Positions 8,234 through 38,667 of a stretch of 64,000 bases of DNA are shown in pieces (position 1 is the first letter of the stretch; every line of letters starts with the position of its first letter). The notes under the pieces are model-generated. The model made no database searches. It was not told the origin of the DNA and was given only the letters and a program-made list of their open reading frames with translations. Both the position numbers and the translations under genes were made by a program. The stretch lies in IMG/VR virus record IMGVR_UViG_3300024239_000013, positions 1 through 64,000 of that record; one strand, given 5' to 3'.

Positions 8234-8847
8234 TCAAATCTATATATTTATACAAGTACATTAATTAAAAAAAACTGATCACTGAGAGATGTACGTTTCA
8301 ATTGCATTGTCATCTCTTTGATTCTCTCCTAGATTTTTCTTAGATGTAAAGCGCGGTCGGGCCCCCCTGAAATCCCTCTGCATCCCCGGGGCCGGCCACA
8401 AGAATCTTTTTTAAAAAAGTTTCGAATTTTTTGAAGTGCTAGATGATCTTAGATAAGATGATAAAGTAGTGAAGTGTGTTAATAGTGAGTAATGAACTGA
8501 TGTCTGGCTATATATGATCGTTTGGGATTGTCAGTGATGATGCTCTTAGATAAAAGTGAACGCAACATAAGTTCTTTTAAAAACTGATGTCTACAGATAC
8601 AATATGCTTTATTAATATTCTTTAATTGACATATATGAGTCGTGCTAGATAGGTGCACAGAGATCTTATATTATATTTTTTTCATTATAACACACGTAGA
8701 CAACCCAAATAAAAACACAGATCTAAACTCCTTATTGAGATCTGTGTTTAGTAAAATACCAACTTTTAAGTGGGCCTGTGTGAGTACACAGAGAGGTTTG
8801 GATGTCTTGGAAGTCTGAGAGACGGAAAATCTAATCTTATTATCATT

Positions 8848-9240
8848 TTAACCTATAATGGGTTCTTCTATACCCAAGTAGCCTAGCAAGGCAGAGACTA
8901 TGGCAGAGGGTGAATTGTTATAGATGGCAGTGAGCATGGGATCACTTGACTCAGCTCCCTCGTTGTTCATTAGACACACTTCCACGTAGCTGTTGTTGAC
9001 CATGGAAGCTAAGATGGTATAGACACTACCGGAATTCGTTTTAAATCTGATCTCGTTATCTACGTTTTCAAGAGACTGAATAGAAGGGATTTTGTTAAAG
9101 ACTACCCATATGGTGTCCATTACAAGATACCAGTCCTCCCAGATTTCTCTGGACACCCCGATTTGCTTTAGCTCGCTGTCTGTTATATAGTTCTTAGATT
9201 CTGGAATCTCGCTGCTTGTTTTGCTTTTCTTCTTACTCAT
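8848..9240 (-). CDS. Hypothetical protein, GC-richer than average
   Basis: 130-aa ORF preceded by a class II promoter (9262-9292). Confidence 0.75.
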   Translation of the reverse strand: MSKKKSKTSSEIPESKNYITDSELKQIGVSREIWEDWYLVMDTIWVVFNKIPSIQSLENVDNEIRFKTNSGSVYTILASMVNNSYVEVCLMNNEGAESSDPMLTAIYNNSPSAIVSALLGYLGIEEPIIG

Positions 9241-9467
9241 ATGCTTTAGAAATTTTATGATGTTATAGATACCTGGAGTGGGTTGTGTTTCGGGTTGCCT
9301 TTGATGACTAGGATATTTTAAAGACCAGGACTGGACTTAGAATGATCTTTAATAGAGTAGAGTAGAGTAGAGTAGTAGGGTGGGATTGCACTTTGTCTTG
9401 ACTCTGTGTTGTGTCTGTTATTAATTCGGCCGGGTTCTTCATCAGAATTTCCTTATTGACCACCGAA

Positions 9468-9523
9468 GGTTCTTTATAGATGGTTCTTTATAGATGGTTC
9501 TTTATAGATGGTTCTTTATAGAT
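9468..9523. repeat. Four perfect 14-bp tandem repeats GGTTCTTTATAGAT (iteron-like)
   Basis: Read directly; follows a (TAGAG)n tract near 9352-9376 and precedes a C-run-rich GC island at 9524-9765. Confidence 0.95.
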
Positions 9524-10337
9524 CCCCCGGCGCTTAAGCGGTTGGACTCCCGAGGTTATTCCCTGTATACGAGGCCCCCTTAAAAAGACCCGTCTGAGGG
9601 ACCCCTAATATGTCCTTTTTGTCTCCTCCACTAAATATGGGACCCCTGCTTAGCGTATATGTCCCCTACATATACCTCCTATACGAGGGGGCTTCATACC
9701 CCCTATTAGAGGACCCCAATTTTACCCCCCTCCACATATTTGGAGGGCCCCGTTTTTCCGGGGAGATAGAGAAGTATTCAGATCTGTTTTTTATTTTTCG
9801 AAACAGGGTTTACACCTCGGAAAGTATCATATACCCTTACATTGAATCAATGTTATCTTTGTTATCTTAATGTTATCACCTCGGAAACCATCTGTACTCT
9901 AAATGCATAAGCATAGATGCTGAAGCAATGATGACACCTCGGAATGTTTATATAAAGGGGTCGTTACTTAGATGTTGAAGCAATGTTATCACCTCGGAAC
10001 CCTTTCTTTGACAGCATGCTGCATCATATATGACATCAGCAACACCGTCGACCGAGGTGTAATCCTTAGACTAGATGCAAAAGTTTCTTTTATTACCTCT
10101 CACAGATTTAGTCTGTTGCTTACAGAAAAATTCCTTAAGGTACATCAGTTATGACATCGTCACCACCGTCGACCTCGTCGACCGAGGTGTAATCTATAGA
10201 CTAGGTGAAAGATTCTTTCACTCATCTTTAGCTACTTACACAAAAATCCCACCGAGAGCATTGTGCATCAGGGTGGGGATTTCTGGTTGGATAATAATTT
10301 ATTATCCGGTATGTCAAGATTAAAAAGTCCTTTGTGC

Positions 10338-10553
10338 TTATGGTTCAGTGTCCAGATCTGTTAATACCTCGGGTTCAGGTAAGAAGAACATTATAAGAAA
10401 AGCTGTTGCGAGTAGGGTCACTCCTATAAAGAATAACAACTCGTTTAACGGTTCATCATTAAAAGGAATATATTCCTGAACTACTCCTGCCATTGTTAGG
10501 TAGGCTATAAAAAATAAAAGGATCGTTGCGATTAGGTAAAATAACTTTTTCAT
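10338..10553 (-). CDS. Small two-TM membrane protein
   Basis: Two hydrophobic helices; followed by a hairpin terminator near 10245-10283. Confidence 0.7.
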   Translation of the reverse strand: MKKLFYLIATILLFFIAYLTMAGVVQEYIPFNDEPLNELLFFIGVTLLATAFLIMFFLPEPEVLTDLDTEP

Positions 10554-10619
10554 GGTGTTGTGCTGTATTATATTGAGATTTATATTATATATTAAGTATA
10601 TTAAAAAGGTCTATTTTTT

Positions 10620-10850
10620 TTAAATGTCGTTTCCGTTTTCATCGCATAGAACAAATCGACCTTCGATTACTGGAGGGAACTCGGTTGATGGTTCGCCCTC
10701 TGATACGTATTTGAAGTTGGCTTTACCTTTTGATATGATTAAGGTGTTATCAGCAGAAACACTTATAACGATTTTCTTTTCCGAAAGGAGATTGAATAAC
10801 TCTTCGAATTCTTTTGCAATTTTAGATTCTGTCTTTAGTAGCTTTGCCAT
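10620..10850 (-). CDS. Hypothetical early protein
   Basis: Directly downstream of a class I promoter. Confidence 0.75.
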   Translation of the reverse strand: MAKLLKTESKIAKEFEELFNLLSEKKIVISVSADNTLIISKGKANFKYVSEGEPSTEFPPVIEGRFVLCDENGNDI

Positions 10851-10875
10851 GTCTTTGTTTGATTAGTTTGATGAT

Positions 10876-10908
10876 GTAAATGTAAGAAAAATAACCCGGA
10901 TAAAAAAA
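10876..10908 (-). promoter_or_regulatory. Class I (early-type) promoter TTTTTTATC-N13/14-TAnnTTT(A/G); ~28 copies at 10.9-36 kb plus variants near 53.1, 56.4, 57.8 and 61.9 kb
   Basis: Plus-strand text (g/c)taaatgtaag...gataaaaaaa recurs near 10876, 11410, 11859, 12694, 13050, 13742, 14011, 15768, 16301, 16591, 17451, 17986, 19094, 19653, 20152, 20620, 21077, 21741, 22504, 22852, 23651, 25093, 26192, 26737, 30448, 32460, 34988, 35913, almost always just upstream of a minus-strand ATG; -7 box matches Bacteroidota TAnnTTTG. Confidence 0.9.
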
Positions 10909-10947
10909 TAATTTAGCCGGGTTATTTTAACTTCTTTTTTATTCCCC

Positions 10948-11355
10948 TTACCAGGTAACTGGATTAGCTTCAATAAACTCCGGGGTATAAAGGTGTTTTG
11001 AGTTATCGTTATATTTAATTACATCCTCCCACCAGCGGATTCCCATTTCTAATCTAACTATTGCAAATTTTGCAATATCATCACTGTGGACGAAAAAGAA
11101 AATGTCGTTTCTATCTCCTGTATCCGGAATTGGATTTCCCATTTCGTCTAGGTCAGGAAGTGTTTGCACCTCGGTATGGTATTTTATCCTCACCCCCAAT
11201 TCACTCTTAAAGAAAGACTCGAATTCTTCAATTGAACTGTCACCTAATATAACCGCGGGCCAAACGCAAAGTTGTGTGAAGTTGTTGGAGGGTTGAGTTT
11301 CAGTAGATGGTATTACTGGTAAGATTCTTTCGGTTGTTTTTTTAGTTGTTTCCAT
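10948..11355 (-). CDS. Hypothetical early protein
   Basis: 135-aa ORF after a class I promoter. Confidence 0.8.
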   Translation of the reverse strand: METTKKTTERILPVIPSTETQPSNNFTQLCVWPAVILGDSSIEEFESFFKSELGVRIKYHTEVQTLPDLDEMGNPIPDTGDRNDIFFFVHSDDIAKFAIVRLEMGIRWWEDVIKYNDNSKHLYTPEFIEANPVTW

Positions 11356-11617
11356 TTTGTTTGATTTTTTTTGGTTAGTTAATTATAATGTTATATTTAA
11401 TTTGATGACGTAAATGTAAGGAAAATAATCCGGATAAAAAAATAATTAAAGCGTTAATTTTTTTTAATTTTTTTAGTTTTTTTATTTCCATGTAAAATAA
11501 TCCACACACCGTCGTCCCTGGTGGGATCATCATTTTCATTTTTTATGTAAAGGGGAAATTCCATAAAAAAATCCGAGTTACCCCGGATTTCCAATTTTCC
11601 ATTTTCACTAACTAATT

Positions 11618-11815
11618 TTATTTCAAACCAATTCCTTTAAAATTAAAATTCCCTTTTTTGATTTGTTCAACATCGGCTTTGACCGCATCCGCATACCTCG
11701 GGTCTTGGATTTCCTTTTCCTTGCAATCCATGCAAATTATTTGTGTATTGAACATTGACATAATGGTTACACCGTTGGTAGGTTTGCTACATCTTTGACA
11801 GTTTTGTACGTTCAT
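11618..11815 (-). CDS. Small Zn-finger-like protein
   Basis: CQRC...CMDC; class I promoter upstream. Confidence 0.75.
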   Translation of the reverse strand: MNVQNCQRCSKPTNGVTIMSMFNTQIICMDCKEKEIQDPRYADAVKADVEQIKKGNFNFKGIGLK

Positions 11816-12194
11816 GATTTTAAGATTTTGTTTGGTTGGTTGATTAAATTTGATGACGTAAATATAAGGAATCTTTTTAAGATAAAAAAATAATTCATGA
11901 ATTATTTTTGAGATTTTTTGTCCGAGGTGTACGTGTGTTGCTGTGCATGAGACTTCTTCGCAAGAAGTGCAATTAGAACCTGATGTTTACCAACAGGTTC
12001 CGATCAACTACACCGTCGCTTAGTCGTCCAAGGTGTAGCTGATAAAGCACTAGCACTTCTTAGTTATACTGGTATGATTTTTTTTATCTTAACCTATAGC
12101 CAAAAAAAACCCGAAAGATTTAACAATCTTCCGGATCTTCAAACTCAACTTAGAAACCTATAGAAATTTAACCTTCGAACCTATAGAAACCTTG

Positions 12195-12314
12195 TGGACA
12201 GAGCAGGACTCGAACCTGCAATAGTACCATACTTGCTTCGGATGCCTCCTACAACAACGGAATCGAACCGTATCTCTCGATGCCTCGAGCGCTTTACCAC
12301 TTCGCCACCTGTCC
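12195..12314 (-). ncRNA. tRNA-Leu-like RNA, 69-nt insert replacing the anticodon/variable arms
   Basis: Acceptor GGACAGG/TCTGTCC-A, D arm TGGCGAAGTGGTAAAGCGC, T arm GCAGG-TTCGAGT-CCTGC; extra internal ACGG-TTCGATT-CCGT. Confidence 0.75.
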
Positions 12315-12345
12315 TTATTTTATTTTTTTTATATATTTGTTATGA

Positions 12346-12381
12346 CCCTCGCGGGCGGAGTATCTTAGTAACATAGTATGT
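12346..12381. repeat. 36-bp dispersed motif CCCTCGCGGGCGGAGTATCTTAGTAACATAGTATGT (copies 15532-15567, 23918-23953; partial 20206-20227, ~35977-36011, ~37806-37852)
   Basis: First two copies identical; all intergenic and in the same orientation. Confidence 0.85.
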
Positions 12382-12391
12382 TATAGATCCC

Positions 12392-12658
12392 TTAATCCCA
12401 CCAATTATGAGCCCCAATGTTTACTTTTTTAAATCCAACCAGAAGTGAAAATAAATCTGAAGGAATGTTAACGGTAATGTATGATTCATTAGCCACCCTT
12501 TTCGTAAACATCACAACTGGATATGTGTTGAGAATCGTTTCAATTCCTTCCTCGTTAAAAGAACTGAGATTGATGTTTTCCAATGCAATTAAATTTGGGA
12601 GGTCTTTGATATTTATATCAACAGCAACAGTAATGTTGGTAACCATTTCTTTGTTCAT
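12392..12658 (-). CDS. Hypothetical early protein
   Basis: ORF after a class I promoter. Confidence 0.75.
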   Translation of the reverse strand: MNKEMVTNITVAVDINIKDLPNLIALENINLSSFNEEGIETILNTYPVVMFTKRVANESYITVNIPSDLFSLLVGFKKVNIGAHNWWD

Positions 12659-13169
12659 AACGTTTAGTTTTAGTAATTATTATTTTTTGATGATGTAAAT
12701 GTAAGAAAAATAAACGGGATAAAAAAAATAATTAGAGGATTATTTAATTTTTAATGTTTATTTAATTCCTTTTCGATTTCAATAGACATGCTATCTATAA
12801 ACTTTTTAGTTTTCTGATGTTCTATTGTTTCGTTCAGTCTTAAAAGAGATTCCTTTTCTGTGATTCTATTCATTCTGGAATTGTGTTTATTTGATTCGTG
12901 AATGAATGTAAATATCTTTATATCTCAAATCCAACTATTCTTCCAAGTATTAATACTATCGTTACCGCTAGTCCTACTAACACATACAAATATTGTATCT
13001 TTTTTATCATTTTAAATTATATTTAGATTCATTAATTTTATTTGATGACGTAAATGTAAGAAAAGTAAACCAGATAAAAAAATAATTTGATGGTTATTTT
13101 TGGATTTTAACTTTCTTTTATTTCCGAGGTATTTTACCCTAGATAGCTCTAGAATACTTGAGATTAAAA

Positions 13170-13262
13170 AAAACTAACATGGATACCGACATGCTTCCAC
13201 CGTCGACCGTCGACATCAAAACTAACATGGATACCGACATGTTTCCACCGTCGACCTCGGTG
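13170..13262. repeat. 48-bp-period direct duplication containing CACCGTCG sites
   Basis: AAAACTAACATGGATACCGACATG(C/T)TTCCACCGTCGACC twice. Confidence 0.9.
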
Positions 13263-13360
13263 GGCTCGATCTGCTTACTCCTTTTGCTTAGCATCTCACA
13301 CAAAAAAAGAGCCTCACGCTTGCGAGGCCCCTTTCAAACTAATTGTATAACCAAACTAAA

Positions 13361-13702
13361 CTAAACTTCTATTTCAACTTTCCATTCGTTTTTAATTTCA
13401 ATTCTTAGATTGTACATCATTGTAACGTAAAATGGAAGTACTTTTTGATTTATGTGATCTGCTCTTCCCACCGCGGCAGAAAGGTCATTATCCAAAATCG
13501 ATTTTACGAAACTTCCGGGGTATGTGTCGATACCAACCTTATTTAGCATTATGGAAGTTCCTATGTTTATTATATGCTCATTTGCTTCTTCGTTATGAAG
13601 AAATTCAAATGGGATTAAATTCTTATTTGAGTTTAAGTAGTCTTCTACTTGTTTTCTTACTCCTTGTTCTGCGAGTTGTCTGTCAATTTTTTGTGTTTCC
13701 AT
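13361..13702 (-). CDS. Hypothetical early protein
   Basis: ORF after a class I promoter; PGSFV.SIL.NDL..A..RAD motif. Confidence 0.8.
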   Translation of the reverse strand: METQKIDRQLAEQGVRKQVEDYLNSNKNLIPFEFLHNEEANEHIINIGTSIMLNKVGIDTYPGSFVKSILDNDLSAAVGRADHINQKVLPFYVTMMYNLRIEIKNEWKVEIEV

Positions 13703-13774
13703 TTTTGTTTAGTTTTAAGTTATTTGAATAATTTTGATGGTGTAAATGTAAGGAATATTTTCGAGATAAAAAAA

Positions 13775-13993
13775 TTAACTGGATAAATATTCCTGAAATC
13801 TTTCGTTATAATTCGATTTTCCAAACCCCTTGTTATTCTCGTGGCACCATTTTAAGAATGGAACGACTACAGCATATTCTTTAGAGGTTAGATCCTCTTC
13901 GAATAGATATAGAATTTCGTCTGGGTTAAAAGTTCCCTCGATGTTTACTGCTTTACTGATTAAAGTGTAGAGTCTTTGTGAAAGTTGTTTCAT
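13775..13993 (-). CDS. Hypothetical early protein
   Basis: Start re-called to MKQLSQ, downstream of the promoter at ~14011. Confidence 0.75.
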   Translation of the reverse strand: MKQLSQRLYTLISKAVNIEGTFNPDEILYLFEEDLTSKEYAVVVPFLKWCHENNKGFGKSNYNERFQEYLSS

Positions 13994-14086
13994 TTTAGTT
14001 GATTTTATACCACAAATATACAAAATCTCGTTTAGATAAAAAAAAATAATTTTATAATTTAAGATTATAATTTATTTTTATCCCGG

Positions 14087-14176
14087 GGTGTAGCTGATAG
14101 AGATCTCAGAGAAAGAGAATGTGTAATTTCATGTTTTTCTTTAATATAACACTCTGAGCTCTCTATCAACTACACC
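14087..14176. repeat. Long imperfect inverted repeat flanked by CACC sites
   Basis: GGTGTAGCTGATAGAGA..CTCAGAG / CTCTGAG..TCTCTATCAACTACACC; the same arms occur in swapped order near 12003-12043. Confidence 0.8.
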
Positions 14177-14287
14177 GTTGCCCGGGGTGAAAATGAAGTT
14201 AAGAGAGTGCAAAAAAAGGATCCTTCATCTTGAAGGATCCCCACTCTTTCTTTATTGTAAAATTCTTCCGTGATTTTATACGTACAT

Positions 14288-14818
14288 TTACTTTGTACTG
14301 TAAAATATCTTTCTATTGTAATCGAACACCACCTTATGTTCGGAAAAGAAATCTGAACCGAGTATGCCTATGATCTCCACCCCGGATCCGTTTTTAATGG
14401 TGTTGATAACATTTGATAGGTTACTTGCCTTTAAACTTATATTAAATTGCTTATCCTTTATCTTTATAGTTCTTATATTAACCACGTCTTTCATAAAGTT
14501 AGAACCTCCGATCCCAACAAAGTCTGTGTCTGAATCCATTGTGACTAGACCAATCTCCTCGGATCTATTATAGTCAATCACGCTCACATTAGCACCGGTG
14601 TCAAGTAACATATACTCTTTTTTACCTCCTATCTCCACCTCAGCAAATAGAAGATTACTGTCATTTGTTGTTAGATAATGGAAAGCTCCGATCGGCTCAC
14701 CGTCGTAAACTACTTGTTGGCTGTTTCTTAAGTCCTCTATCTTCTTGTTCTGATTGAATATAAACACCGATGATGTTAATAACAAAACACCTAATAGAAT
14801 GTAATAAATCGATTTCAT
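14288..14818 (-). CDS. Retropepsin-like aspartyl protease with N-terminal membrane anchor
   Basis: LLDTGA and GILGSDF motifs; hydrophobic N-terminus. Confidence 0.85.
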   Translation of the reverse strand: MKSIYYILLGVLLLTSSVFIFNQNKKIEDLRNSQQVVYDGEPIGAFHYLTTNDSNLLFAEVEIGGKKEYMLLDTGANVSVIDYNRSEEIGLVTMDSDTDFVGIGGSNFMKDVVNIRTIKIKDKQFNISLKASNLSNVINTIKNGSGVEIIGILGSDFFSEHKVVFDYNRKIFYSTK

Positions 14819-14989
14819 GTTAATTTTTTGTTTTGTTTTTTGTATTTAATTAAATTATTCTAAGGTATCTATCTTCTTTTTACTTTATGTGCAAATATAC
14901 TAAAAAATACCAAGGAAAAAAAATTCTCTGCATTTGAACTTTATTTAGAGTTCCTACCGTGGATATAATTAATCATCCAAATCTCAATT

Positions 14990-15290
14990 CTGTTTTTCCA
15001 ACTGTTTTTCCAACTGTTTTTCCAACTGTCTCTCTTCTGTTTTTTAGTGTCTACACCGTGGGACGAAAAATCACATGACGTTTAAACAATTGCTAATTGC
15101 TTAGTGGTCATCACCTAGCAATTGCATCTACCGTGGGATAGAAATCTCTTAGAAACCACCCAGTATTACTTAAACAATTGCTTAGCAAGATGCTAAGCAT
15201 CACACACACCTCGGAATGTGAACCACCAGCATTTAAACAATTGCTTAGTAGACATCACCTAGCAATTGCACCTACCGTGGGATAGTTATA
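14990..15290. repeat. Non-coding repeat cluster: (CTGTTTTTCCAA)x3, TTAAACAATTGCT x3, CATCACCTAGCAATTGCA.CTACCGTGGGATAG x2
   Basis: Read directly. Confidence 0.85.
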
Positions 15291-15581
15291 AACCTCTTTT
15301 CTGTTGCTACTTTATTGTCAAATCCACCGGACCAATGTTATAAACCTCGGGCTGCCTTTGATTAATAAAATGTCACTCACACACATATTAAAAAATCCCG
15401 ATAATAGATTATCGGGATTGAAGTAGAATTATTCAAGCTCTACTAAAACTAAACTAATGATGTAAACAAACTAATAACTATTTTATAACCAAAGATATTT
15501 ATATTACGTATTATTTTTCTTAGCATATCTGCCCTCGCGGGCGGAGTATCTTAGTAACATAGTATGTATAGGGGTGCTTAA

Positions 15582-15743
15582 TTAATTTAAGCAAACCTTA
15601 GCCCTAATATTACGATTTTCAAGTGTTGCAAAAGCTCTCTCTTCCTTTTCTGCTGCTTTTAAATCCATTTCCAATTTGGCTAGCATTGCCATCATTAAAA
15701 GCATTCCTAAATTTTTTTCGTTGTTGTTTAGTGGTGTTTCCAT
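15582..15743 (-). CDS. 53-aa hypothetical early protein (METPLNNNEK...), missing from the ORF track
   Basis: ATG 15743 to TAA 15582; class I promoter at ~15768. Confidence 0.6.
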   Translation of the reverse strand: METPLNNNEKNLGMLLMMAMLAKLEMDLKAAEKEERAFATLENRNIRAKVCLN

Positions 15744-15800
15744 TTTTTTTCGTTTTTTAATTATGGTGTAAATGTAAGAAAAATAAACCAGATAAAAAAA

Positions 15801-16257: not shown

Positions 16258-16359
16258 TTTGATTTTTTTAATTGAGTTATTGTTATTTTTTTATTATGAA
16301 GTAAATGTAAGAAAAATCCACCAGATAAAAAAATAATTTGGTCGAATTTTTTTGCTGAA

Positions 16360-16557: not shown

Positions 16558-16654
16558 ATATTCACTATTTATAATTTTTTATTTATACTTCAAATATAAA
16601 AAATCCCAGCCAGATAAAAAAATAATTCGGCTGGGATTTTTTATGAAATTATTG

Positions 16655-30852: not shown

Positions 30853-30921
30853 TTTTTTTAAAATTAATTTTTTTTTCATTCTTTTGAATTCAGCTTACAA
30901 ATTTTCTCAATCAGTTCTCTG

Positions 30922-31245: not shown

Positions 31246-31511
31246 AACACCTCGGCTTCTTTTAACTGTTCGTAGACATTGAGCACCTTGTGGTGGTCAG
31301 AGTTTTCTATTTCGTTGATAAGAGTTTCTATCACCGAGGATCCTAGATCATTTTCAACGTCCTCCTTCCTACGGTGTTTACCCTGAATTATGAATGATAG
31401 AGTGGTTAAAGCATCACAGTCCGAAGATGCTATGAATTCACATATCTTCTTTCTCATTCTGTGACCTTCGACCATCTTGGTCTGGTTGAGATAAAGACTA
31501 TTTACTCCCAT
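31242..31511 (-). CDS. Hypothetical protein
   Basis: Operon member. Confidence 0.65.
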   Translation of the reverse strand: MGVNSLYLNQTKMVEGHRMRKKICEFIASSDCDALTTLSFIIQGKHRRKEDVENDLGSSVIETLINEIENSDHHKVLNVYEQLKEAEVL

Positions 31512-31734
31512 TGATCAGCAGTAAATAAACTATAATTACTAAAACTGATCCCATCCAGCTTTTTAGAGAAGGTTCCACGTCGAATCCGATTAGCATTAAT
31601 CCAGCTACCAGAAGCATTGGCAACCCTACAAAAAAAAGCAACGAAAACATAGCCAGAAAAATTAAAGCTGATGTTCCCATAGATTGGAGATCCCCCCTTG
31701 ATAGTTTTCTAAAAAATTCTCTTACTCTTTCCAT
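31498..31734 (-). CDS. Small membrane protein
   Basis: Two hydrophobic segments. Confidence 0.7.
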   Translation of the reverse strand: MERVREFFRKLSRGDLQSMGTSALIFLAMFSLLFFVGLPMLLVAGLMLIGFDVEPSLKSWMGSVLVIIVYLLLINGSK

Positions 31735-31805
31735 ATTAATGTACCTGATTTATTTTTTTTTATTTTTATTATCTATTATATAATTTTTCTTTCCGTTTTT
31801 CTTTT

Positions 31806-32054
31806 TTAGATTTCCCACGGTTGTTTATCGCCGATACCTCTTTGCCACTTAATCTCGTTGTTAACCAAGATCCCGACAATTTCACCGTTGGTGGTAGGTT
31901 TAAGTGCAATGCTTTTAACATAACTACCTGGTTTCTTAACTTTATCGTAGATAAACCTTTTCCCATTTTCGTAAACCACAGTGACCTCATAGCCTCCTGG
32001 TTGTAGACTCAGTTCATTTGTTCTGTAATCATCAGATACCCTTAGATCGCTCAT
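31806..32054 (-). CDS. Hypothetical protein
   Basis: TN.LSL.PGG..V.V.Y..G....YD.VK.P..Y motif. Confidence 0.75.
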   Translation of the reverse strand: MSDLRVSDDYRTNELSLQPGGYEVTVVYENGKRFIYDKVKKPGSYVKSIALKPTTNGEIVGILVNNEIKWQRGIGDKQPWEI

Positions 32055-32095
32055 AATGAATTATTTTTTTTATTAAATTTTTTTTTATTTTGAGT

Positions 32096-32434
32096 TTATG
32101 TAGAAAATATATCCAGATCCGGGTTAGGTATAAGTCTCCAGCTTTTCTCTACCCCAGGTCCTCTTGCTAGACTAACCGTAATAGCCTCTTCCTTTAGCTT
32201 ATTCAAAGCTTCTATATAATCCCCTTTTTTATATAGTTCTTGTATCCCCTTTGCAGTAGTCCCGTTGATGTCTGCCATATAAACAACAGCGTGTCTGGTT
32301 CTATTTGCATTTGCTCTTAGCACCATCATGGAGAGTTCCTTTTCATCAAACTTGGGTTCTCCAGTTTCCACATTATATGGTGCAACTCTAAAAGACTCTA
32401 AACCATATGCGTCTGCTATTCCGTAAACTTTCAT
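32096..32434 (-). CDS. Hypothetical early protein
   Basis: GIAD.YGLESF...RA.AN..RHA...W..IPNP.LD; class I promoter. Confidence 0.8.
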   Translation of the reverse strand: MKVYGIADAYGLESFRVAPYNVETGEPKFDEKELSMMVLRANANRTRHAVVYMADINGTTAKGIQELYKKGDYIEALNKLKEEAITVSLARGPGVEKSWRLIPNPDLDIFST

Positions 32435-32842
32435 AAAATTTCTTTTTGGTTTTAATGACGTAAATGTAAGAATAAAGATCGAGATAAAAAAATTATTTTA
32501 CAATATAAAAAAAAAGGAGGAACTCAAGTAATGAATCCACTCCTATTTAGAAATTGGGCATATAATTTTTTTTATACCCTCTATATATTCTCATTCCTAT
32601 ACTTTTTTTGTAACGAAAGTAAATATTCCCAGGTTAATTTCCTGCTGCCATCAACTGAATTAACTGCATCATATTCATCCTTAGTTGGGTCTTTTATCTC
32701 TCCAAATTTCCAGCTTATGATAAGGTCCAATATAATGCTGGATTTAGTAATGCTTATGTGAAGTTGTCTATTCGACCGATTTATCCTTCTAACCTCTTCT
32801 CCTCCTAGCCTATCAGTTTCCTTTCTGATGATCCATTGCTTC

Positions 32843-33049
32843 TTAAGCCTCCTCGCCTTCTTCTTTATCCAGTTTATCATTGGCATTGTAGAATTTGATT
32901 CTGGATTCAATATCACCGGGGTTTATGCGAATCCCTATAGATTCCAGGTTCTTTACAACCTTGTCGGAATCCACTTCACCGTTGTTTTCTTCTGCAAATC
33001 TTTTTATCTCTTTATAGATAAGATCAGATTTGAATTCGTGTGATTTCAT
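32843..33049 (-). CDS. Small hypothetical protein
   Basis: ATG-started ORF with protein-like composition. Confidence 0.6.
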   Translation of the reverse strand: MKSHEFKSDLIYKEIKRFAEENNGEVDSDKVVKNLESIGIRINPGDIESRIKFYNANDKLDKEEGEEA

Positions 33050-33094
33050 ATTAGATTTTTAATAATAATTATATTATGATTTTTTTTAATCTGC

Positions 33095-33364
33095 TTAACC
33101 ATTATCCGAAGATTCCTGTTTGGCTAAAAGACTTATGCAATGTAGAATAATCCTTTGTTTGTCCTCTAGATTAATCTTACTTGAATCCAATTCTTTCTTA
33201 GCAGCCATAACTTGTAAATAAACTCCTCTTGCTAGTTTTTCAACCTCCTTTCTGTAGGTGACTAGTAGTTCGCTTGTCTTAGCATCCATGCTTAATTCTA
33301 TAATATTTTTTTTTATTAGTGTTTTAATTTCCCGTTCGATAGTTTGATAACACATTTCCAACAC
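33095..33364 (-). CDS. Hypothetical protein (true start probably MDAKT)
   Basis: Operon member. Confidence 0.55.
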   Translation of the reverse strand: MLEMCYQTIEREIKTLIKKNIIELSMDAKTSELLVTYRKEVEKLARGVYLQVMAAKKELDSSKINLEDKQRIILHCISLLAKQESSDNG

Positions 33365-33482
33365 GTAACTGCTGTTGCTTGGTAATCAACCTTATCAACT
33401 GGTTCCCCACATAGTTTACAATTTAATCTCTTAAATGTTTTTTGAATTCTGGATTTAATTTTATCCTTTAATTTAGCCATGA

Positions 33483-33797
33483 TTAGTATCCCATTTCAAT
33501 TTTAACTGAAGGATCCGGTTTTATCTCGTGTCCGGGAATGTTTCTTTTAACATAATCTGCTAGGAATTGACATCTCTCATACTCCTCATTGATTATGAAA
33601 AGACTTGTCATTCTATCTATAGCCTTACATACTGAATCCAGATCAACATCAACTATTGCTGAATCTCCTTTCGATACCAACATATCGTAAGCCATATAAC
33701 ATCCATCAACAAACTCTTTTCTTGATATCTCTTTTAGCTTCTCCTGAATTTCTTTTGAGTGTGCTTCAAACTCTTCGTCGTCAAAGTCTTCGTGCAT
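33483..33797 (-). CDS. Hypothetical protein with UVR-like EEYERC motif
   Basis: F...EEYERC..L. Confidence 0.7.
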   Translation of the reverse strand: MHEDFDDEEFEAHSKEIQEKLKEISRKEFVDGCYMAYDMLVSKGDSAIVDVDLDSVCKAIDRMTSLFIINEEYERCQFLADYVKRNIPGHEIKPDPSVKIEMGY

Positions 33798-33801
33798 AAC
33801 G

Positions 33802-34023
33802 TTATTCTATTATATGTGCTGTTTTACTTAATCCTGTTTCTTTAACCTCTCTGTATAAAGTACTGCCTTCTGAAATGATTTCCATTTCTCCCTCAAATTC
33901 GCTACTGGTGTCTCTTCTGATTTTCTCCCTAATGATAACACCGCCGGCGAGATATACCTTGTTCTGTATATCGTAATGCTTAGCCTTGTTATCCGTGGTA
34001 CATATAAATTTTACCGCTGCCAT
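33802..34023 (-). CDS. Small hypothetical protein
   Basis: Class II promoter at 34051-34080. Confidence 0.7.
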   Translation of the reverse strand: MAAVKFICTTDNKAKHYDIQNKVYLAGGVIIREKIRRDTSSEFEGEMEIISEGSTLYREVKETGLSKTAHIIE

Positions 34024-34332
34024 TTTTATGGTTTTATTTTAGATTTATATATTATAGTGAAAATCCAGACAAAGATTTCAGACAAATTGGTGGTAGGCTT
34101 TACTTCATATTAAGCTTTCACCCCGGGAGTTTTTCTTTTTTCATCCAGCCAATTTTTAAACATGGCTCTTTCCTCCTCGTTCATTTCATTGTGGAATTTT
34201 TCAAATTCTCCAGCTGCTTCCTTAAAATCTTGAATCAATTGTTCAATGCTTCTTGTTGTTCTCATAATCTTTTATTTTAAATTGTTAAATGTATTAATAT
34301 TCTTTTTTTCCTTCCTTTCCTTCCCTTAATTA

Positions 34333-34965
34333 CTATACATACTCGTATTTTTTTTCAGCGGTCCCATTGTACTTAAGCCCATTCTCATAGAATTCCATTT
34401 CGTTCTCAGAGATTCTAATTTCCATTTCAGCATCTGAAAAATAATCACTATAAGATCTTTCTATTCTGTTTTTTATTTCTTCTACGTGGGTTTTGAATTT
34501 TTCCTCTGCGTTTTTAACTAGGACTTTAACGTAGTTGTACCTTGGATCAGATTCTAAAAATTCATTATCAATTGTAAGTGTCGTTGAAGTATAATGGCTT
34601 TCATGAAAACTAAAGCTAATGTACTTCTGGTATTTTTTCGGAAAGCCAAGCCATTCGAGAAACATTTCTTCGTTGGTTATCTCTAGGGCTTCCTTAATAT
34701 TAATTGTTCCAAATTCTCCTTCATACTCCAGTCCCTTTCTGTGGTTTTTGAAAACGAAATTGTCATGGTTCTTTTCATAATAATCCTCTCCGAATAACTC
34801 CGCCATTTCTTTGTGTTGGGGTTCGAATAATGCGCAGTCATCAATTGCCCAGTCATAAGCCTCGTCGGAATTTGTGTGCTTTAGTCTTTCCCTCATTTTT
34901 TCGATAGCAACTTTTTTTGCTTCTTCTGAAAGTTCGTTGAATTGGTAAATGTTTATTGTTCTCAT
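34333..34965 (-). CDS. Conserved phage hypothetical protein
   Basis: Y.F.ELSEEAK..AIE N-terminus and N..EF.ENG C-terminus; class I promoter. Confidence 0.8.
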   Translation of the reverse strand: MRTINIYQFNELSEEAKKVAIEKMRERLKHTNSDEAYDWAIDDCALFEPQHKEMAELFGEDYYEKNHDNFVFKNHRKGLEYEGEFGTINIKEALEITNEEMFLEWLGFPKKYQKYISFSFHESHYTSTTLTIDNEFLESDPRYNYVKVLVKNAEEKFKTHVEEIKNRIERSYSDYFSDAEMEIRISENEMEFYENGLKYNGTAEKKYEYV

Positions 34966-35049
34966 TGTTGTCCTATTTTTGATGAGGTAAAATTACAAAA
35001 TCTTATTTAGATAAAAAAATAATTTACAAATTTTTTTAAGAAAAATAAT

Positions 35050-35529
35050 TTAATCTCGAATATTTTCCAACCTCACACTTTCGTTGATTCTTGTATTCAG
35101 CTCTCCAACCTTTAAATTAATCCAGTTGTCAACCCTGGCAGTTATTTCATTTTTAACCAATTCCAGGTCTATATCCACTTTCACATCAAACCCAAAGGAG
35201 ATTTCAATGTTTTCCGAAAATATCCATGTTTTATTACTATTCGGTTTGTAGTTCAATTTTTCAGGTTCGTCAAAGTATTCTATGTAGATTGCGGTTTTCT
35301 CTGCCACTTGGTCGAGTATACTCATACCCAAAGAATTTTTCAAAAAAGCTTTTATTGTTTCAGTTCTACTTATCTCTGCGAGAAACTTGCACACAAAAAG
35401 CTTATCCCTCGACAACTTTTCGGAAGGGAATAAAAATGAATATCTAACATCAATTTCGACATTCTCTAAACCAAGAGATTCCACCTCGGAAATGAATTCT
35501 TCTATCAATCTATCTAACATTTTACACAC
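35050..35529 (-). CDS. Hypothetical protein
   Basis: 159-aa ORF. Confidence 0.7.
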   Translation of the reverse strand: MCKMLDRLIEEFISEVESLGLENVEIDVRYSFLFPSEKLSRDKLFVCKFLAEISRTETIKAFLKNSLGMSILDQVAEKTAIYIEYFDEPEKLNYKPNSNKTWIFSENIEISFGFDVKVDIDLELVKNEITARVDNWINLKVGELNTRINESVRLENIRD

Positions 35530-35609
35530 ATATGAGACTATTATAAACGTGGGTTAAAAAAATGCAATTTCCCAAAAAGCATTTGTGTCTAATGGGTAAC
35601 ACCTCGGAT

Positions 35610-35876
35610 CTATTGCTGTTCCTTGTCCTTAGCCTTTTTACCGGACTCATTTCTTCCCTTTCTCTTAGCAGCTTCTGGATCGGGTCTAGTGACGTACAAC
35701 GAAACCCCTGCAACAACGCAGGTTAGGATCAATAGCATTGGCTTCATGAATCCAGGCCACTCCACAGGATTAAAAGAATCCAATAAGAAACTGAGGTTGA
35801 TATAAACCAGTAATAATGATATAAGGAAAACCTTTCCCTGATACTCGAACGAATTGTTGTTTTTTTGATCAGCCAT
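35610..35876 (-). CDS. Small two-TM membrane protein with basic tail
   Basis: Hydrophobic pair around SFNPVEW; class I promoter. Confidence 0.75.
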   Translation of the reverse strand: MADQKNNNSFEYQGKVFLISLLLVYINLSFLLDSFNPVEWPGFMKPMLLILTCVVAGVSLYVTRPDPEAAKRKGRNESGKKAKDKEQQ

Positions 35877-36160
35877 CTTCTATTCTATTTTATTATATTA
35901 TATTTTTTTTATACAAATATAGAAAATCTTTGCGGAATAAAAAAATTAAATTGGGTTCTAAGAGTTTTTTTTAAACGCCCGGCCACATAGTATATTAGCA
36001 CCTTACTATGTTTTTTTTTGCTGAATCATTTTTTTCCTTCGAGAAAATTTCATAAATTTACATTGGGGAATTGTGGTCAAAAAAATACACCGAGAAAATA
36101 TTCCGCGGTGTAAAATAAAGAATAGGTTGTTTATTATTTAAGTTTATCTTATATTACGTA

Positions 36161-36991
36161 TTAGGGAGTGTAGTTGTCTAGGAAGTGAATAGCCCTTCTC
36201 GCCGAATTCCTATTAAATGTTTCTCTGCTCTTAGTGTGTTTTCTGTAGTATTCACCTCTTCCGAATTCTCTATCGTAGTCATATCCAGGAGAGAGGTAGG
36301 ATTCCAATTCATCTATGAGTTCGCTCACTATTTCCTTAGTATCTATGGGAGCGAGGTCTGTTTCTAGATCCAGCCAGTCCTGAGATGACTTAGGAACCAA
36401 AGGATCATTTAGTAGATCTGTGGCGTAGTTGATTGCAGAGTCTGCGTCGTTTTGTAGTTCGATCTCGGAGCTCGGGTAGGTTAGCTGTAAAGCATATTCC
36501 TCCGGGAGGTCCAGTGTTCTAACCACCCACTTATCAGCTTTGAGCTTATCCTGAGGTCTCTTAGGTGTAAGGATAGTGAATAGTGGGATCCCAATGAAAA
36601 GCTCGAACAACTGCTCGTCATCATCGTAGTCTATTTCTCTGTATAGATCGGGTTCGCCGTCGTAATAGCTTTCCTTCAGACCTTCACCCTCACCTTTATC
36701 CTTACTCATCTCCTTATAAAGAGAAAGAGCCGAGGGTTCGTCAACCAACCCAGCCTTTACGAGTTTGGTGTAGTATGCAGGATCTTCCCATAGGTGATCC
36801 AATGCTATCTCTTCTGCAATCCCTTTGTTGTCGGCGTGTTCAGATTCTACTGCCACCCCGAGTTCCAGTTGCTTATTTTTTAGACTAAGTAGCGTGGCTT
36901 CATCTGAGATGCCATGTCTTTTGGCTACCGCGGGTAGGGTTGGGGGTTTGGAGGCTCCGCCCTGTAAGAACGATTCGAACTTTTGTATCAT
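36161..36991 (-). CDS. DUF5661-like protein with CTS-like N-terminus, GC-rich
   Basis: QL..G..VE.EH...A.EIA.DHL.E.P.YY.KL; MIQKFESFL; family name from memory. Confidence 0.7.
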   Translation of the reverse strand: MIQKFESFLQGGASKPPTLPAVAKRHGISDEATLLSLKNKQLELGVAVESEHADNKGIAEEIALDHLWEDPAYYTKLVKAGLVDEPSALSLYKEMSKDKGEGEGLKESYYDGEPDLYREIDYDDDEQLFELFIGIPLFTILTPKRPQDKLKADKWVVRTLDLPEEYALQLTYPSSEIELQNDADSAINYATDLLNDPLVPKSSQDWLDLETDLAPIDTKEIVSELIDELESYLSPGYDYDREFGRGEYYRKHTKSRETFNRNSARRAIHFLDNYTP

Positions 36992-37059
36992 GTTATGTTA
37001 GGTTATGTTATATTGTATTGTTCCTTGTATATATTTACATGCGTGTTAAAGAGGATGAG

Positions 37060-38140
37060 AGTTAAGACTAAGACTAAGACTAAGACTAAGGTTTCTCTGG
37101 GGAATTTTGGGGAGAATCCCAGAGAGGGCCCGGCCTCCAAATAGATAATAGATATAGTAAAGCTAAGTATACTAAGACTAAGACTAAGTATAAAGCTAAA
37201 GCTAAAGCTAATTAGACTAAGGCTAAGACTAAGACTAAGTATAGACATAGGTATACTAAGAAGACATCCACTATCCAGACTAAGACTAAGACTTGTTCCG
37301 TTCCTAGTTCAGCTAAGAGAACTAATCTGAGTGGTGGGCTCGCGTGCCTCTTGTGGAACCCGGGGCGAGGCGAAGGGTAAAGGGGTACAGAGGGGGTAAA
37401 CGGGGCGATTATCGGGGCGGGGAAATCGGGGCGAGATTCGGGGTCGGACTACGGGGGAAGAAACCAAGTTTTTTTCCAGTTTTTTCCAGTTTTTTCCACT
37501 TCGTTACACTCTGCCAACTTGGTGGGGAAACCCCGGGGGTAAACGGGGATTTCTTAGAATCTCCCAGAAACACCCTGGGTGGTGGGCTCGGCCCTAAAGA
37601 GGGGCTTCCACAAGGGCCCTTTTTACGAGAAAACCCCCGGTTGGATATGGATAAGTACCTGGATACTCTCTGGTTGGGTACGACTAAGTGATAGGGATAC
37701 TCTCTGGTTGGATATGGATAAGTACCTGGATACTCTCTGGTTACGTAACGATTGGGGAATGTGTCTACGTCTCTCTATGTACTAATGACTGAAGCGTCTT
37801 GAATTCCTTACGCGGGTATGCGTCCATGTAGTAACTTACTATCATACTATGTTTCTTTAGATAGTGTGGTTATTGTACTTAGTCTTAGTCTTTCTTATCT
37901 CTTCTCACTCTACTTGACTACTGAGAATTGGTTTGTTATGCTACGTAACTTATCTAGTAGTATAATGAGATAGATGTGGATATTATGCTTACTGTGCATC
38001 ACCCTGGGTAGTCTTAGTCTTAGTCTTAGTCTACCACCTACATTTATGCTTAGCTTTATACTTAGTCTTAGTGACGGAAAATGTATGAGCTATTTGGAGG
38101 CCGGGCCCTCTAGGAGAAAGGAGCCCGAAATCCCCCTCGA
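37060..38140. repeat. ~1.1-kb non-coding element with inverted arms, (ACTAAG)n tracts, a G-run tract and internal direct repeats
   Basis: Perfect inverted repeats 37123-37144/38090-38111 (22 bp) and 37177-37199/38050-38072 (23 bp); GGTTGGATATGGATAAGTACCTGGATACTCTCTGGTT twice (~37639, ~37706). Confidence 0.9.
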
Positions 38141-38667
38141 GCTCTCATTTCACCCAATTGCCTGATCCATGTTAACCGACATGATATAGAATGGATCTTT
38201 TTAAAGTAATATACAGAAAATAAAAGAAACCCATTAAAATTTTTGAGAATTTCAACTCAAATAAATCTGTTGATATGATCTTGATGGTTTCCCCGAGATC
38301 AAAGCGGGGGTGATCGAAAGGACTGGTATGGGATCTTCCTAGAATTGCAGCACTAAAAAGAATCGGAATGCTTTAATGTCGCATTCAGCATTTAATTAAA
38401 AGGCAGGTTGATTCCTGCTTTTTTTGCGCAGATTCCATAGGTCTGAGAGTTTTTATTCAAATTCATATATCACAATAAAACAATCAGTATGGTATTTATT
38501 ATACGCATTCTTAAATGCAGCAAAGTGATTTACAGAAACTCGCTAAAAAAAGATCTCTATGTCTTTATCCTAACAAAAACCGGACAATGTTTTAGAGATA
38601 TATAAAACAGAACAAAATAAAAGGTGAATTGTATAAAAAGGCGGACAATAAAAAAATCCCAAAAAAT

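What the first reader, a model, noticed from the sequence alone, without database searches (positions are those of the whole stretch)
8240..38600. ~27-kb early-gene module bracketed by two oppositely oriented GC-rich elements: possible long terminal repeat / host-takeover region
Seen: nearly all class I promoters, CACC sites and 36-bp motifs lie between two long non-coding regions. The left one is C-run-rich on + (9524-9765) and the right one G-run-rich on + (37360-37460). They share TATTTGGAGG (9737, 38091, reverse complement at 37134) and loosely related GGGGGTAAA/TTTACCCCC words (37392, 37535 vs ~9721). The adjacent genes (8848, 36161) are also GC-richer. Known: T5 and SPO1 carry small early host-takeover genes in long direct terminal repeats, and T5 has a repeat- and palindrome-rich injection-stop signal. 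Inference: the two regions are genome-end/terminase or injection-control sites, or replication origins.
Basis: inference. Interest (0 to 1): 0.65.

Follow-up and report, generated by a model that had tools for sequence, protein, structure and literature searches.

The report
Early-gene module with conserved boundary elements
A 27-kb block of about 60 small early genes in an uncultivated 319-kb jumbo phage is fenced by two conserved, unrelated non-coding DNA elements, and partial read-depth evidence suggests the block may be a long terminal repeat collapsed by the assembler, as in phages T5, SPO1, PA5oct and XacN1.

Summary
The window is the first 64 kb of a 319,334-bp jumbo-phage contig with 31% GC. 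Between 9.8 and 37.9 kb lie all 22 genome copies of CACCTCGG/CCGAGGTG, 23 of 26 copies of GATAAAAAAAT (29 Bacteroidota-type promoters) and all 6 copies of the 36-bp motif. The densest C-run window of the genome is at 9524 and the densest G-run window at 37362. The two elements are not related to each other: shared words are at chance level. Each is conserved at the same syntenic place in four phage lineages. They share only a layout: a G-run block, read outward from the module, followed by 3-4 AT-rich tandem repeats. There is no Rfam match, no covariation, no recombinase gene and no inverted copy. Contig depth drops across the right element (36.6 to 16.1 in one run, about 8.3 to 5.0 in another). 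This fits a collapsed direct terminal repeat of about 27.5 kb, but only one boundary could be examined, and the large terminase is closest to T4-type enzymes. My best reading is a terminal-repeat-borne early module with packaging or end signals at its edges (about 0.4). Replication origins and purely regulatory boundaries remain open.

The parts
10338..36991 (-). Early-gene module: about 60 small, mostly ORFan genes, all leftward except a CHAP-domain gene. It carries 29 promoters with the consensus ATTTTTTTATC-N14-TTACATTTAC, many overlapping a terminator hairpin.
   Evidence: Pfam/PHROGs mostly blank
9813..10200 (.). Left boundary array: four direct CACCTCGG half-sites (9813, 9877, 9935, 9990) and two units of about 130 bp, each with the palindrome CACCGTCGACCGAGGTG plus TAATCTATAGACTAG. 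Copy number varies between strains, and homology to all relatives breaks at 9821.
   Evidence: (D12, D19)
10240..10280 (-). Intrinsic terminator of the last module gene (CCCACC...GGTGGG stem followed by a T-run on the minus strand).
   Evidence: read; inference
9524..9765 (-). Core of the left element: C-runs on the plus strand, so G-rich on the gene-sense strand. Its blocks GGAGGGGGGTAAAA, GGGG(T/A)CCC x3 and CCTCGTATA x2 are conserved in four lineages.
9468..9523 (.). 14-bp tandem repeat GGTTCTTTATAGAT x4 next to the core; copy number varies between relatives.
9353..9375 (.). TAGAG x4.6 simple repeat.
8848..9240 (-). 130-aa ORFan gene (GC 0.42) immediately downstream of the left element; 84-95% identical homologues in close relatives and a weak (26%) syntenic homologue in G002.
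8340..8400 (.). Third short GC-rich non-coding block (GGGCCC and GGCCGGCC palindromes), conserved at the syntenic place in G002.
36161..36991 (-). First gene of the module: 276 aa, N-terminal DUF5661 domain, GC 0.46.
37053..37300 (.). Proximal arrays of TAAGAC/TAAAGC hexamers with the proximal inverted-repeat arm (37123-37153, core GGGCCCGGCCTCCAAATAG).
   Evidence: (I3, I5, I14)
37360..37460 (+). G-run iterons: CGGGGCG at 37361, 37401, 37413 and 37427, which are all four copies in the genome, plus degenerate copies at a period of 12-13 bp.
37467..37498 (.). 10-bp AT-rich tandem repeat (TTTTTTCCAG x3); degenerate equivalents are present in G002 and G001.
37500..37640 (.). Conserved GC-rich block: 95-99% identical in close relatives whose neighbouring gene is 88-91% identical, and recognisable in G002 and G001.
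37639..37742 (.). 33-bp tandem repeat x3.1, each unit with TGGATA words (TATGGATAA is one mismatch from a DnaA box). Assembly contigs of many runs break here.
37821..37858 (-). Sixth copy of the 36-bp motif (sense-strand consensus ACATAGTATGnTnnTAAnATACT followed by a GC-rich stretch); kept at the same place in G002, G005 and G001.
38002..38111 (.). Distal inverted arrays (TAGTCT x4) and the distal inverted-repeat arm (38081-38111).
38112..38628 (+). Conserved non-coding stretch before the first LRR gene. Together with 37743-38111 it is about 96% identical to L001, counting two indels, against 91% for the LRR gene. It includes a stem at 38403-38418 followed by a run of seven T on the plus strand.

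Best explanation
The stretch from about 9.8 to 37.5 kb is the early (host-takeover) transcription module of an uncultivated jumbo myovirus-type phage, probably of a Bacteroidota host. It is most likely a long direct terminal repeat of about 27.5 kb that the assembler collapsed to one copy.

The two non-coding elements are different cis-acting DNA sites that mark its two edges. Each presents a G-run block, read outward from the module, followed by 3-4 AT-rich tandem repeats. The right one is additionally enclosed by a conserved 19-bp inverted repeat about 960 bp apart. They would act as protein-binding sites for the end-making machinery (terminase recognition or cutting, duplication of the repeat) and possibly for control of DNA entry.

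Shown: the module, its promoters and motifs; the uniqueness and conservation of the elements; a depth step inside the right element.
Inferred: early timing, the terminal repeat, the left boundary, and any role in packaging or injection.
For: 1. Module identity. There are 29 promoters of one type, with a TAnnTTTA/G -7 box as in Bacteroidota (consensus recalled from the literature), confined to 10.9-35.9 kb. The genes are small ORFans. The octamer CCGAGGTG is confined to the module and strand-biased 16:6. The same confinement holds in G002 (11 of 13 copies in 28 kb) and G005 (12 of 17).

2. The elements are functional. They are the genome-wide extremes of C-runs and G-runs. Both are conserved block by block at syntenic places in G001, G002 and G005, whose flanking proteins are only 25-70% identical.

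3. Depth. In run X9 the contig covering 33000-37668 has depth 36.6 and the contig covering 37718-38850 has 16.1. In X2, which is identical in sequence to the window, contigs at 33000-37404 have depth 7.2-11.3 (length-weighted about 8.3), and contigs at 37466-38741 have 4.3-5.2. No second strain was laid on the low side. The low side is at least as conserved between strains as the module, so a strain mixture does not predict the drop.

4. Precedent. PA5oct has a 39-kb terminal repeat with 105 genes, many highly transcribed early (PMC7318152). XacN1 has a 66-kb repeat that was collapsed in assembly and found by 2x coverage, and the same paper notes that SPO1's repeat encodes host-takeover functions (PMC5852040).
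Against: - Only the right boundary could be laid, because one call of at most 6 kb was allowed.
- The runs were Logan contigs, so depth is one mean figure per contig and no read starts or ends are visible. X5 is very uneven (28 to 352) and X12 shows no step.
- The large terminase is nearest to huge-phage, PAU, Lak and PTm1 enzymes and then to T4-type enzymes (28-40% identity). T4 itself packages by headful without fixed ends (established knowledge).
- The contig is not closed, and IMG/VR classes it as linear without end repeats. The terminal repeats flagged for relative G002 are only a 127-nt assembly overlap.
- A unidirectional origin in the right element, or a tandem duplication, could also give a depth step.
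Confidence: 0.4

Rival explanations
1. The right element, and perhaps the left, is a replication origin. Iterons (CGGGGCG x4-5, 33-bp x3 with DnaA-box-like TGGATAA words) next to AT-rich tandem repeats would serve as an unwinding element. G-rich outward transcripts might prime synthesis through an R-loop. The depth step would then be a copy-number discontinuity at a unidirectional origin in replicating DNA.
For: The iteron and AT-repeat layout. Three near-DnaA boxes lie at 37646, 37713 and 37975. The element sits at the only large switch of gene orientation and at the local minimum of cumulative skew. X2 contig depth rises towards the element from the left (7.3, 7.2, 8.4, 11.3) and then drops.
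Against: - The skew pattern is fully explained by gene orientation: the whole genome is negative except the plus-strand LRR block.
- DnaA-box matches in the window are only modestly above chance (33 against 22 expected).
- No initiator gene is adjacent.
- Iteron spacing and number are not conserved in G002 or G001, and the G-runs are broken in close relatives.
- The 11.3 figure covers the hexamer repeats and the GC island and is probably inflated.
Confidence: 0.2
2. The elements are only transcriptional and regulatory boundaries. They would be long upstream regions of the two GC-richer genes (DUF5661 and the 130-aa gene) and insulators of the early module, carrying binding sites for a module-specific dimeric regulator (the CACC-N9-GGTG palindromes). 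They would have no role in genome ends or replication, and the depth step would be noise.
For: - Each element lies directly upstream, in the sense direction, of a gene that has no class I promoter.
- A copy of the 36-bp motif lies at the head of the right element, and other copies precede genes and a tRNA-like gene, as a second promoter class would.
- Palindromic CACC...GGTG sites sit 60-170 nt upstream of several early promoters.
- X12 shows no depth step.
Against: Ordinary promoter regions do not need 1-1.6 kb containing the genome's most extreme G/C-run blocks, tandem arrays and a conserved 960-bp inverted-repeat frame. The depth step is seen in two independent runs at the same place.
Confidence: 0.2
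3. The GC-rich blocks encode large structured non-coding RNAs, like the ncRNAs reported in the PA5oct terminal repeat.
For: Non-coding blocks are conserved across distant lineages. In the possibly RNA-derived run X5, the contig at 36684-37609 has depth 352 against 22-110 for its neighbours. The left core folds slightly better than shuffles (z -2.0 and -2.6).
Against: - No Rfam family matches, even at permissive E-values.
- The right core folds no better than shuffles (z +0.2 and +1.2).
- RNAalifold on four lineages of the left core gives a positive (unfavourable) covariation term and one compensatory pair out of 42. The right-element alignment gives 3 of 182.
- Conservation falls on short primary-sequence words with variable spacers.
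- The X5 excess coincides with the only GC-rich island and can be amplification bias.
Confidence: 0.08
4. The right element is an invertible or formerly mobile segment. The 960-bp core between the conserved 19-bp inverted repeats would flip to switch expression between the LRR gene array and the early module.
For: The inverted-repeat arms are 90% complementary over 31 nt, with a core conserved in G001 and G002 and one arm in G005. The element sits between divergent gene blocks.
Against: The internal block order and orientation are the same in the window, L001-L004, G002 and G001. No strand-changing joints were seen in four runs. No serine or tyrosine recombinase gene was found in the genome, while the controls rang in 12 and 14 of 14 genomes.
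Confidence: 0.05

Closest known systems
Long direct terminal repeats carrying early genes in jumbo phages (PA5oct, 39 kb; XacN1, 66 kb)
   Same: A block of tens of kilobases holding about 60-130 small, mostly uncharacterised genes. It is transcribed early in PA5oct, collapsed in first assemblies and detected by 2x coverage in XacN1, and contains a cell-wall hydrolase gene, as XacN1's repeat does (PMC7318152, PMC5852040).
   Different: Here the repeat is not demonstrated: there is one boundary, contig depth only, and no termini. The boundary elements described here have no reported counterpart in those papers as far as I read them. The terminase was not compared with theirs.
T5 pre-early region with injection-stop signal, and the SPO1 host-takeover module, both in terminal repeats
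   Same: Small early genes each with a strong host-type promoter, grouped in one block next to a long non-coding region full of direct repeats and palindromes (and DnaA boxes in T5). This rests on my knowledge of T5 and SPO1. The SPO1 point is also stated in PMC5852040.
   Different: There is no sequence or protein homology to T5 or SPO1 genes. The terminase is nearest to T4-type enzymes. Two-step DNA transfer cannot be tested. There are two different elements, one at each edge.
Iteron-type replication origins of plasmids and phages
   Same: Tandem short binding-site-like repeats next to AT-rich repeats and DnaA-box-like words.
   Different: There is no adjacent initiator gene. Iteron spacing of 12-13 bp is not in helical phase and is not conserved in relatives. 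There is no independent skew signal.
Herpesvirus pac1/pac2 and T7 SRL/SRR arrays at concatemer junctions (recalled from memory, not tested)
   Same: Runs of G or C flanking T-rich elements, and regular arrays of short repeats beside a terminal repeat, read by terminases of the same broad enzyme lineage.
   Different: This is a resemblance of layout only. No cleavage site is known here.

Membership tests
Terminal-repeat-borne early module (T5 / SPO1 / PA5oct / XacN1 type) | The region is present twice per virion genome, giving a 2x coverage plateau with two sharp edges. | tested here: inconclusive
   A step of 2.3x (X9) and about 1.4-1.7x (X2) at the right edge only; X5 is noisy and X12 flat; the figures are contig mean depths.
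Terminal-repeat-borne early module (T5 / SPO1 / PA5oct / XacN1 type) | Fixed physical termini, seen as read-start pile-ups or by end mapping. | not testable with these tools
   Only Logan contigs were available; table 6 lists no such places.
Terminal-repeat-borne early module (T5 / SPO1 / PA5oct / XacN1 type) | A dense cluster of small genes with strong host-type early promoters. | tested here: met
   29 promoters of one consensus in 26 kb and ORFan genes. Early timing itself is inferred.
Terminal-repeat-borne early module (T5 / SPO1 / PA5oct / XacN1 type) | The large terminase groups with enzymes of phages that make long exact terminal repeats. | tested here: inconclusive
   The nearest characterised hits are T4-type (28-34% identity), along with PAU, PTm1 and Lak phages, whose ends are unknown to me. 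No tree was built with PA5oct, XacN1, T5 or SPO1.
Iteron-type replication origin | Tandem iterons plus an adjacent AT-rich unwinding element. | tested here: inconclusive
   CGGGGCG x4 and 33-bp x3 next to TTTTTTCCAG x3, but spacing and number are not conserved in relatives.
Iteron-type replication origin | A strand-composition switch that is independent of transcription. | tested here: not met
   Skew follows gene orientation throughout the 319 kb.
Curated structured RNA families (Rfam) or a new structured ncRNA | A match to a covariance model, or covarying base pairs. | tested here: not met
   No Rfam hit in either element. Covariation is absent. Folding z-scores range from -2.6 to +1.2.
Invertible DNA switch (Hin/Gin type or Bacteroides invertons) | Flanking inverted repeats, a cognate recombinase, and both orientations present in populations. 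| tested here: not met
   Inverted repeats are present. No resolvase or integrase domain is in the genome. One orientation is found in all assemblies, and no strand-changing joints were seen.

The most novel reading that the evidence does not exclude
The octamer CCGAGGTG is confined to the module, strand-biased 16:6 and kept so in G002 and G005. It is stacked four times in direct repeat exactly at the left edge, and also occurs there as CACC-N9-GGTG palindromes. It may be an end-protection or entry-control signal for a linear genome end. One possibility is a Chi-like sequence oriented to stop a host RecBCD/AddAB-type nuclease entering from that end. Another is the binding site of a protein that halts or resumes DNA transfer. 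In that reading the two mirror-image 'G-run block then AT-rich repeats' elements would be a previously undescribed kind of terminal-repeat boundary signal, shared by a family of 290-375-kb phages.
Probability: 0.12. Interest if true: 0.75.

Novelty: new member of a known kind. Interest (0 to 1): 0.45.

Why it matters
If the module is a collapsed terminal repeat, the true virion genome is about 27 kb longer than the record. The same would apply to a whole family of metagenomic jumbo phages (IMG/VR contigs of 290-375 kb and relatives in many wastewater runs) that are catalogued as linear or circular without long repeats.

It would also give this uncultivated group a defined first-entering, host-takeover block and two candidate cis-acting sites for end formation. 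That would help with annotation, with estimating completeness, and with choosing which ORFan genes to test for host shut-off.

If it is not a repeat, the finding is still a clean example of deeply conserved non-coding elements delimiting an early regulon. That outcome would be of ordinary interest.

Tried and rejected
- Nucleotide searches of both elements against GenBank phages found nothing.
- IMG/VR scans with the two flanking ORFan proteins found nothing. The module's ATPase did find relatives.
- Homology between the two elements: rejected.
- Structured RNA: no support.
- G-quadruplex as the conserved feature of the right block: rejected, because close relatives interrupt the G-runs.
- Inverton: no support.
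- A T7-like RNA polymerase to explain the 23-nt conserved motif: none found. The control genomes did not ring either, so this negative is weak.
- The 'direct terminal repeats' flag of relatives G002 and G003: for G002 it is a 127-nt assembly overlap, not a biological repeat. G003 was not checked.
- Closing the contig: relatives carry genes beyond window position 1 that are absent from this genome, and the contig ends in a paralogue array, so the record is not a closed circle.
- Candidate small RNA at 38255-38440 and the tRNA-like gene: folding is no better than shuffles.
- Not done: a terminase tree with PA5oct, XacN1, T5 and SPO1, and structure prediction of the two flanking proteins.

Full report
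WHAT THE WINDOW IS

The window is bases 1-64000 of a single 319,334-bp virus contig. The contig has 31.5% GC, and nearly all genes lie on the minus strand, with negative GC skew throughout. The exception is 37-52 kb, where eleven paralogous leucine-rich-repeat genes lie on the plus strand. IMG/VR classes the record as linear, and CheckV rates it 100% complete.

The record is not closed. A relative's contig runs 1,158 nt beyond window position 1, carrying two genes that have no counterpart in this genome. The contig also ends inside a paralogue array.

The large terminase (311 kb) is nearest to those of metagenomic huge phages, Sphingomonas phage PAU, the Lak phages and Tenacibaculum phage PTm1, and then to T4-type enzymes, at 28-40% identity. 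The phage carries its own sigma-70-family gene at 6573-7490. The source is a subsurface metagenome. Close relatives (about 90-95% nucleotide identity) occur in wastewater runs from several studies.

CHECK OF THE OBSERVATION

- Genome-wide, all 22 copies of CACCTCGG/CCGAGGTG lie between 9813 and 35607, where about one copy is expected by chance in 319 kb.
- 23 of 26 copies of GATAAAAAAAT lie between 10899 and 35010.
- All six copies of the 36-bp motif lie between 12346 and 37858, on one strand.
- The promoter behind GATAAAAAAAT reads, on the gene-sense strand, ATTTTTTTATC-N14-TTACATTTAC. There are 29 copies, each 25-45 nt before a start codon and often overlapping the previous gene's terminator hairpin.
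- Its TAnnTTTA/G box matches the -7 element of Bacteroidota promoters. That consensus is recalled from the literature. Host assignment and early timing are inferences.
- The left block 9524-9765 has 9 C-runs in 250 nt (next best in the genome: 4). The right block from 37362 has 13 G-runs (next best: 3). The only island above 48% GC in the genome is 36650-37800.
- The two adjacent genes have GC 0.42 and 0.46, against 0.33 for the module.

ANATOMY OF THE TWO ELEMENTS

Left element, read leftward on the sense strand:
- the terminator of the last module gene (10240-10280);
- two units of about 130 bp, each with the palindrome CACCGTCGACCGAGGTG;
- four direct CCGAGGTG half-sites (9997 down to 9813);
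- a 240-nt G-run block (9765-9524);
- a 14-bp repeat x4 and a TAGAG repeat;
- the 130-aa gene.

Right element, read on the plus strand:
- the start of the DUF5661 gene (36991);
- TAAGAC/TAAAGC hexamer arrays with the proximal arm of an inverted repeat (core GGGCCCGGCCTCCAAATAG);
- CGGGGCG iterons, which are all four copies in the genome;
- TTTTTTCCAG x3;
- a GC-rich block;
- a 33-bp repeat x3;
- a copy of the 36-bp motif;
- the inverted hexamer arrays and the distal arm, 927 nt from the proximal arm (I3).

Read outward from the module, both elements therefore show a G-run block followed at once by 3-4 AT-rich tandem repeats. That is a resemblance of layout. In sequence they share nothing beyond chance (best E 0.09; TATTTGGAGG E 4.2).

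RELATIVES

Close relatives (L001-L014) keep both elements. Tandem-repeat copy numbers vary. Homology breaks at 9821, where one relative has at least three half-sites and five palindromic units in place of four and two.

Among these strains, the right-hand blocks 37300-37370 and 37467-37640 are 95-99% identical, while the neighbouring gene is 88-91% identical. The iterons and hexamer arrays are less conserved (77-90%). The left core (94-97%) is about as conserved as its flanking genes.

More telling are the distant relatives G001, G002/G004 and G005 (290-375 kb, found through the module's ATPase). Their flanking proteins are only 25-70% identical to those of the window. They nevertheless keep:
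- the gene order: LRR genes, element, DUF5661, module, element, 130-aa gene, sigma gene (DUF5661 was not detected in G001; the 130-aa gene only weakly in G002);
- the promoter core, confined to the module;
- CCGAGGTG confined and sense-biased in G002 (11 of 13 copies in 28 kb) and G005 (12 of 17), but not in G001;
- the left core, block by block;
- the right element's arms, 36-bp motif, GC block, AT-rich repeats and CGCCCCG words, in the same order and orientation.

Both elements are thus old, selected features of this phage family.

TESTS OF WHAT THE ELEMENTS ARE

RNA. There is no Rfam match in either element. Folding z-scores are -2.0 and -2.6 (left) and +0.2 and +1.2 (right). Covariation is essentially absent: 1 of 42 pairs across four lineages on the left, with an unfavourable covariation term, and 3 of 182 on the right. 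Conservation sits on short words with variable spacers, which is the pattern of protein-binding DNA.

Inversion. All assemblies show one orientation, no strand-changing joints were seen, and the genome has no resolvase or integrase domain.

Origin. The iteron, AT-repeat and DnaA-like-word layout is suggestive. However, skew follows transcription, the iterons are not conserved in spacing, and no initiator gene is adjacent.

Terminal repeat.
- In X9, one 7.5-kb contig covering 33000-37668 has depth 36.6. The next unique contig (37718-38850) has 16.1. The short contigs inside the 33-bp array have 37 and 59, as expected for words repeated two or three times at a base depth of about 16-19.
- In X2, whose contigs are identical to the window, depth is 7.3, 7.2, 8.4 and 11.3 up to 37404, and 4.3, 5.0 and 5.2 from 37466 on.
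- X5 is too uneven to use, and X12 (depth 2-7) shows no step.
- The sum of all contigs laid on the low side is still low. That side is at least as conserved between strains as the module. A strain mixture therefore does not explain the drop.

The step lies inside the right element, between about 37.40 and 37.65 kb. This is what a collapsed repeat predicts. It is also how XacN1's 66-kb repeat was discovered (PMC5852040). PA5oct's 39-kb repeat likewise holds 105 genes, many highly transcribed early, together with ncRNAs (PMC7318152).

Against this, only one edge was seen, no termini were seen, and the terminase is closest to T4-type enzymes.

MOST LIKELY MECHANISM

My estimate is 0.4 that the module is a direct terminal repeat of about 27.5 kb, carrying the genes that host RNA polymerase transcribes first. 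The two elements would then be the cis-acting sites at its edges where the packaging or end-duplication machinery, and possibly a DNA-entry control, act. The CACC...GGTG array would mark the left edge, and the G-run iterons with the AT-rich repeats the right edge.

The rivals are replication origins (0.2), purely regulatory boundaries (0.2), structured RNAs (0.08) and an invertible or mobile segment (0.05).

COMPARISON AND NOVELTY

The closest known systems are the early-gene-bearing long terminal repeats of T5, SPO1, PA5oct and XacN1. Membership is not established, because the defining 2x plateau and fixed ends were only half tested. If it is true, this is a new member of a known kind, found in an uncultivated phage family, and its boundary elements have no described counterpart that I know of. 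The module-confined, strand-biased octamer is the most unusual detail.

Interest is moderate. The finding matters mainly for correct genome length, for end structure, and for picking out the host-takeover genes of a widespread but uncultured phage group.

Noticed in passing
window 12195-12314 (-): A tRNA-like gene (Rfam tRNA, 37 bits, above the gathering score). It has good acceptor and T arms but an insertion of about 54 nt that itself contains a second T-loop-like GGTTCGATTCC. ARAGORN does not call it. It lies 32 nt downstream of a 36-bp motif copy.
   Followed up: partly
window 12346-12381, 15532-15567, 20192-20227, 23918-23953, 35976-36011, 37821-37858: The 36-bp motif is a conserved 23-nt word (sense strand ACATAGTATGnTnnTAAnATACT) followed by a short GC-rich stretch, always in sense orientation. 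G002, G005 and G001 have 5, 5 and 7 copies in or beside the module. It may be a second promoter class (for the phage sigma factor?) or an RNA-end signal. No T7-like RNA polymerase gene was found.
   Followed up: partly
window 38629-48374 (+): Eleven tandem paralogues of 231-315 aa built of 21-aa (63-bp) leucine-rich-type repeats, 75-80% identical to each other at DNA level. This is the only large plus-strand gene block of the genome. Relatives have similar arrays on both sides of the module.
   Followed up: partly
window 37743-38628: A non-coding stretch that is about 96% identical to L001, counting two indels, and more conserved than the genes beside it. It probably accounts for the near-identical third of the searched stretch found in wastewater runs from several studies (shares 0.35-0.37). 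It contains hairpins and a stem at 38403-38418 followed by a T-run on the plus strand. A candidate small RNA at 38255-38440 has an unremarkable folding energy.
   Followed up: partly
window 1-60 and genome end 319334: The contig is truncated at both ends. Relatives continue beyond position 1 with a 173-aa gene and a 457-aa PG_binding_1 gene that are absent from this genome. The far end stops inside a repeated paralogue array, which is the same place where relative G002's circular assembly was opened.
   Followed up: yes
window 21800-21950 (-): Two copies of a non-coding unit of about 95 nt, each ending in ...CCGTGGGCCGAGGTG, between small genes. This is another setting of the module-specific octamer.
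   Followed up: no
window 28800-29648 and 29700-30446 (-): Adjacent paralogous genes of 282 and 248 aa (phrog_15656, unknown function) with stretches of 82-89% DNA identity. This region is variable or absent in relatives L001, L003 and L004.
   Followed up: no
window 14288-14818 (-), 25137-26141 (-), 26833-27630 (+): The few recognisable module genes are a retropepsin-like aspartyl protease, a RecA/DnaB-like P-loop ATPase (71% identical in distant relatives, and next to an equally conserved 365-aa protein), and a CHAP-domain peptidoglycan hydrolase on the opposite strand.
   Followed up: partly
window 10289-10307 and 37639-37742: The word TCTGGTTGGATA occurs at the inner end of the left non-coding region, running into a perfect palindrome (GGATAATAA T TTATTATCC), and again in the 33-bp repeats of the right element. 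A 12-nt match is not significant on its own (E 0.31).
   Followed up: no
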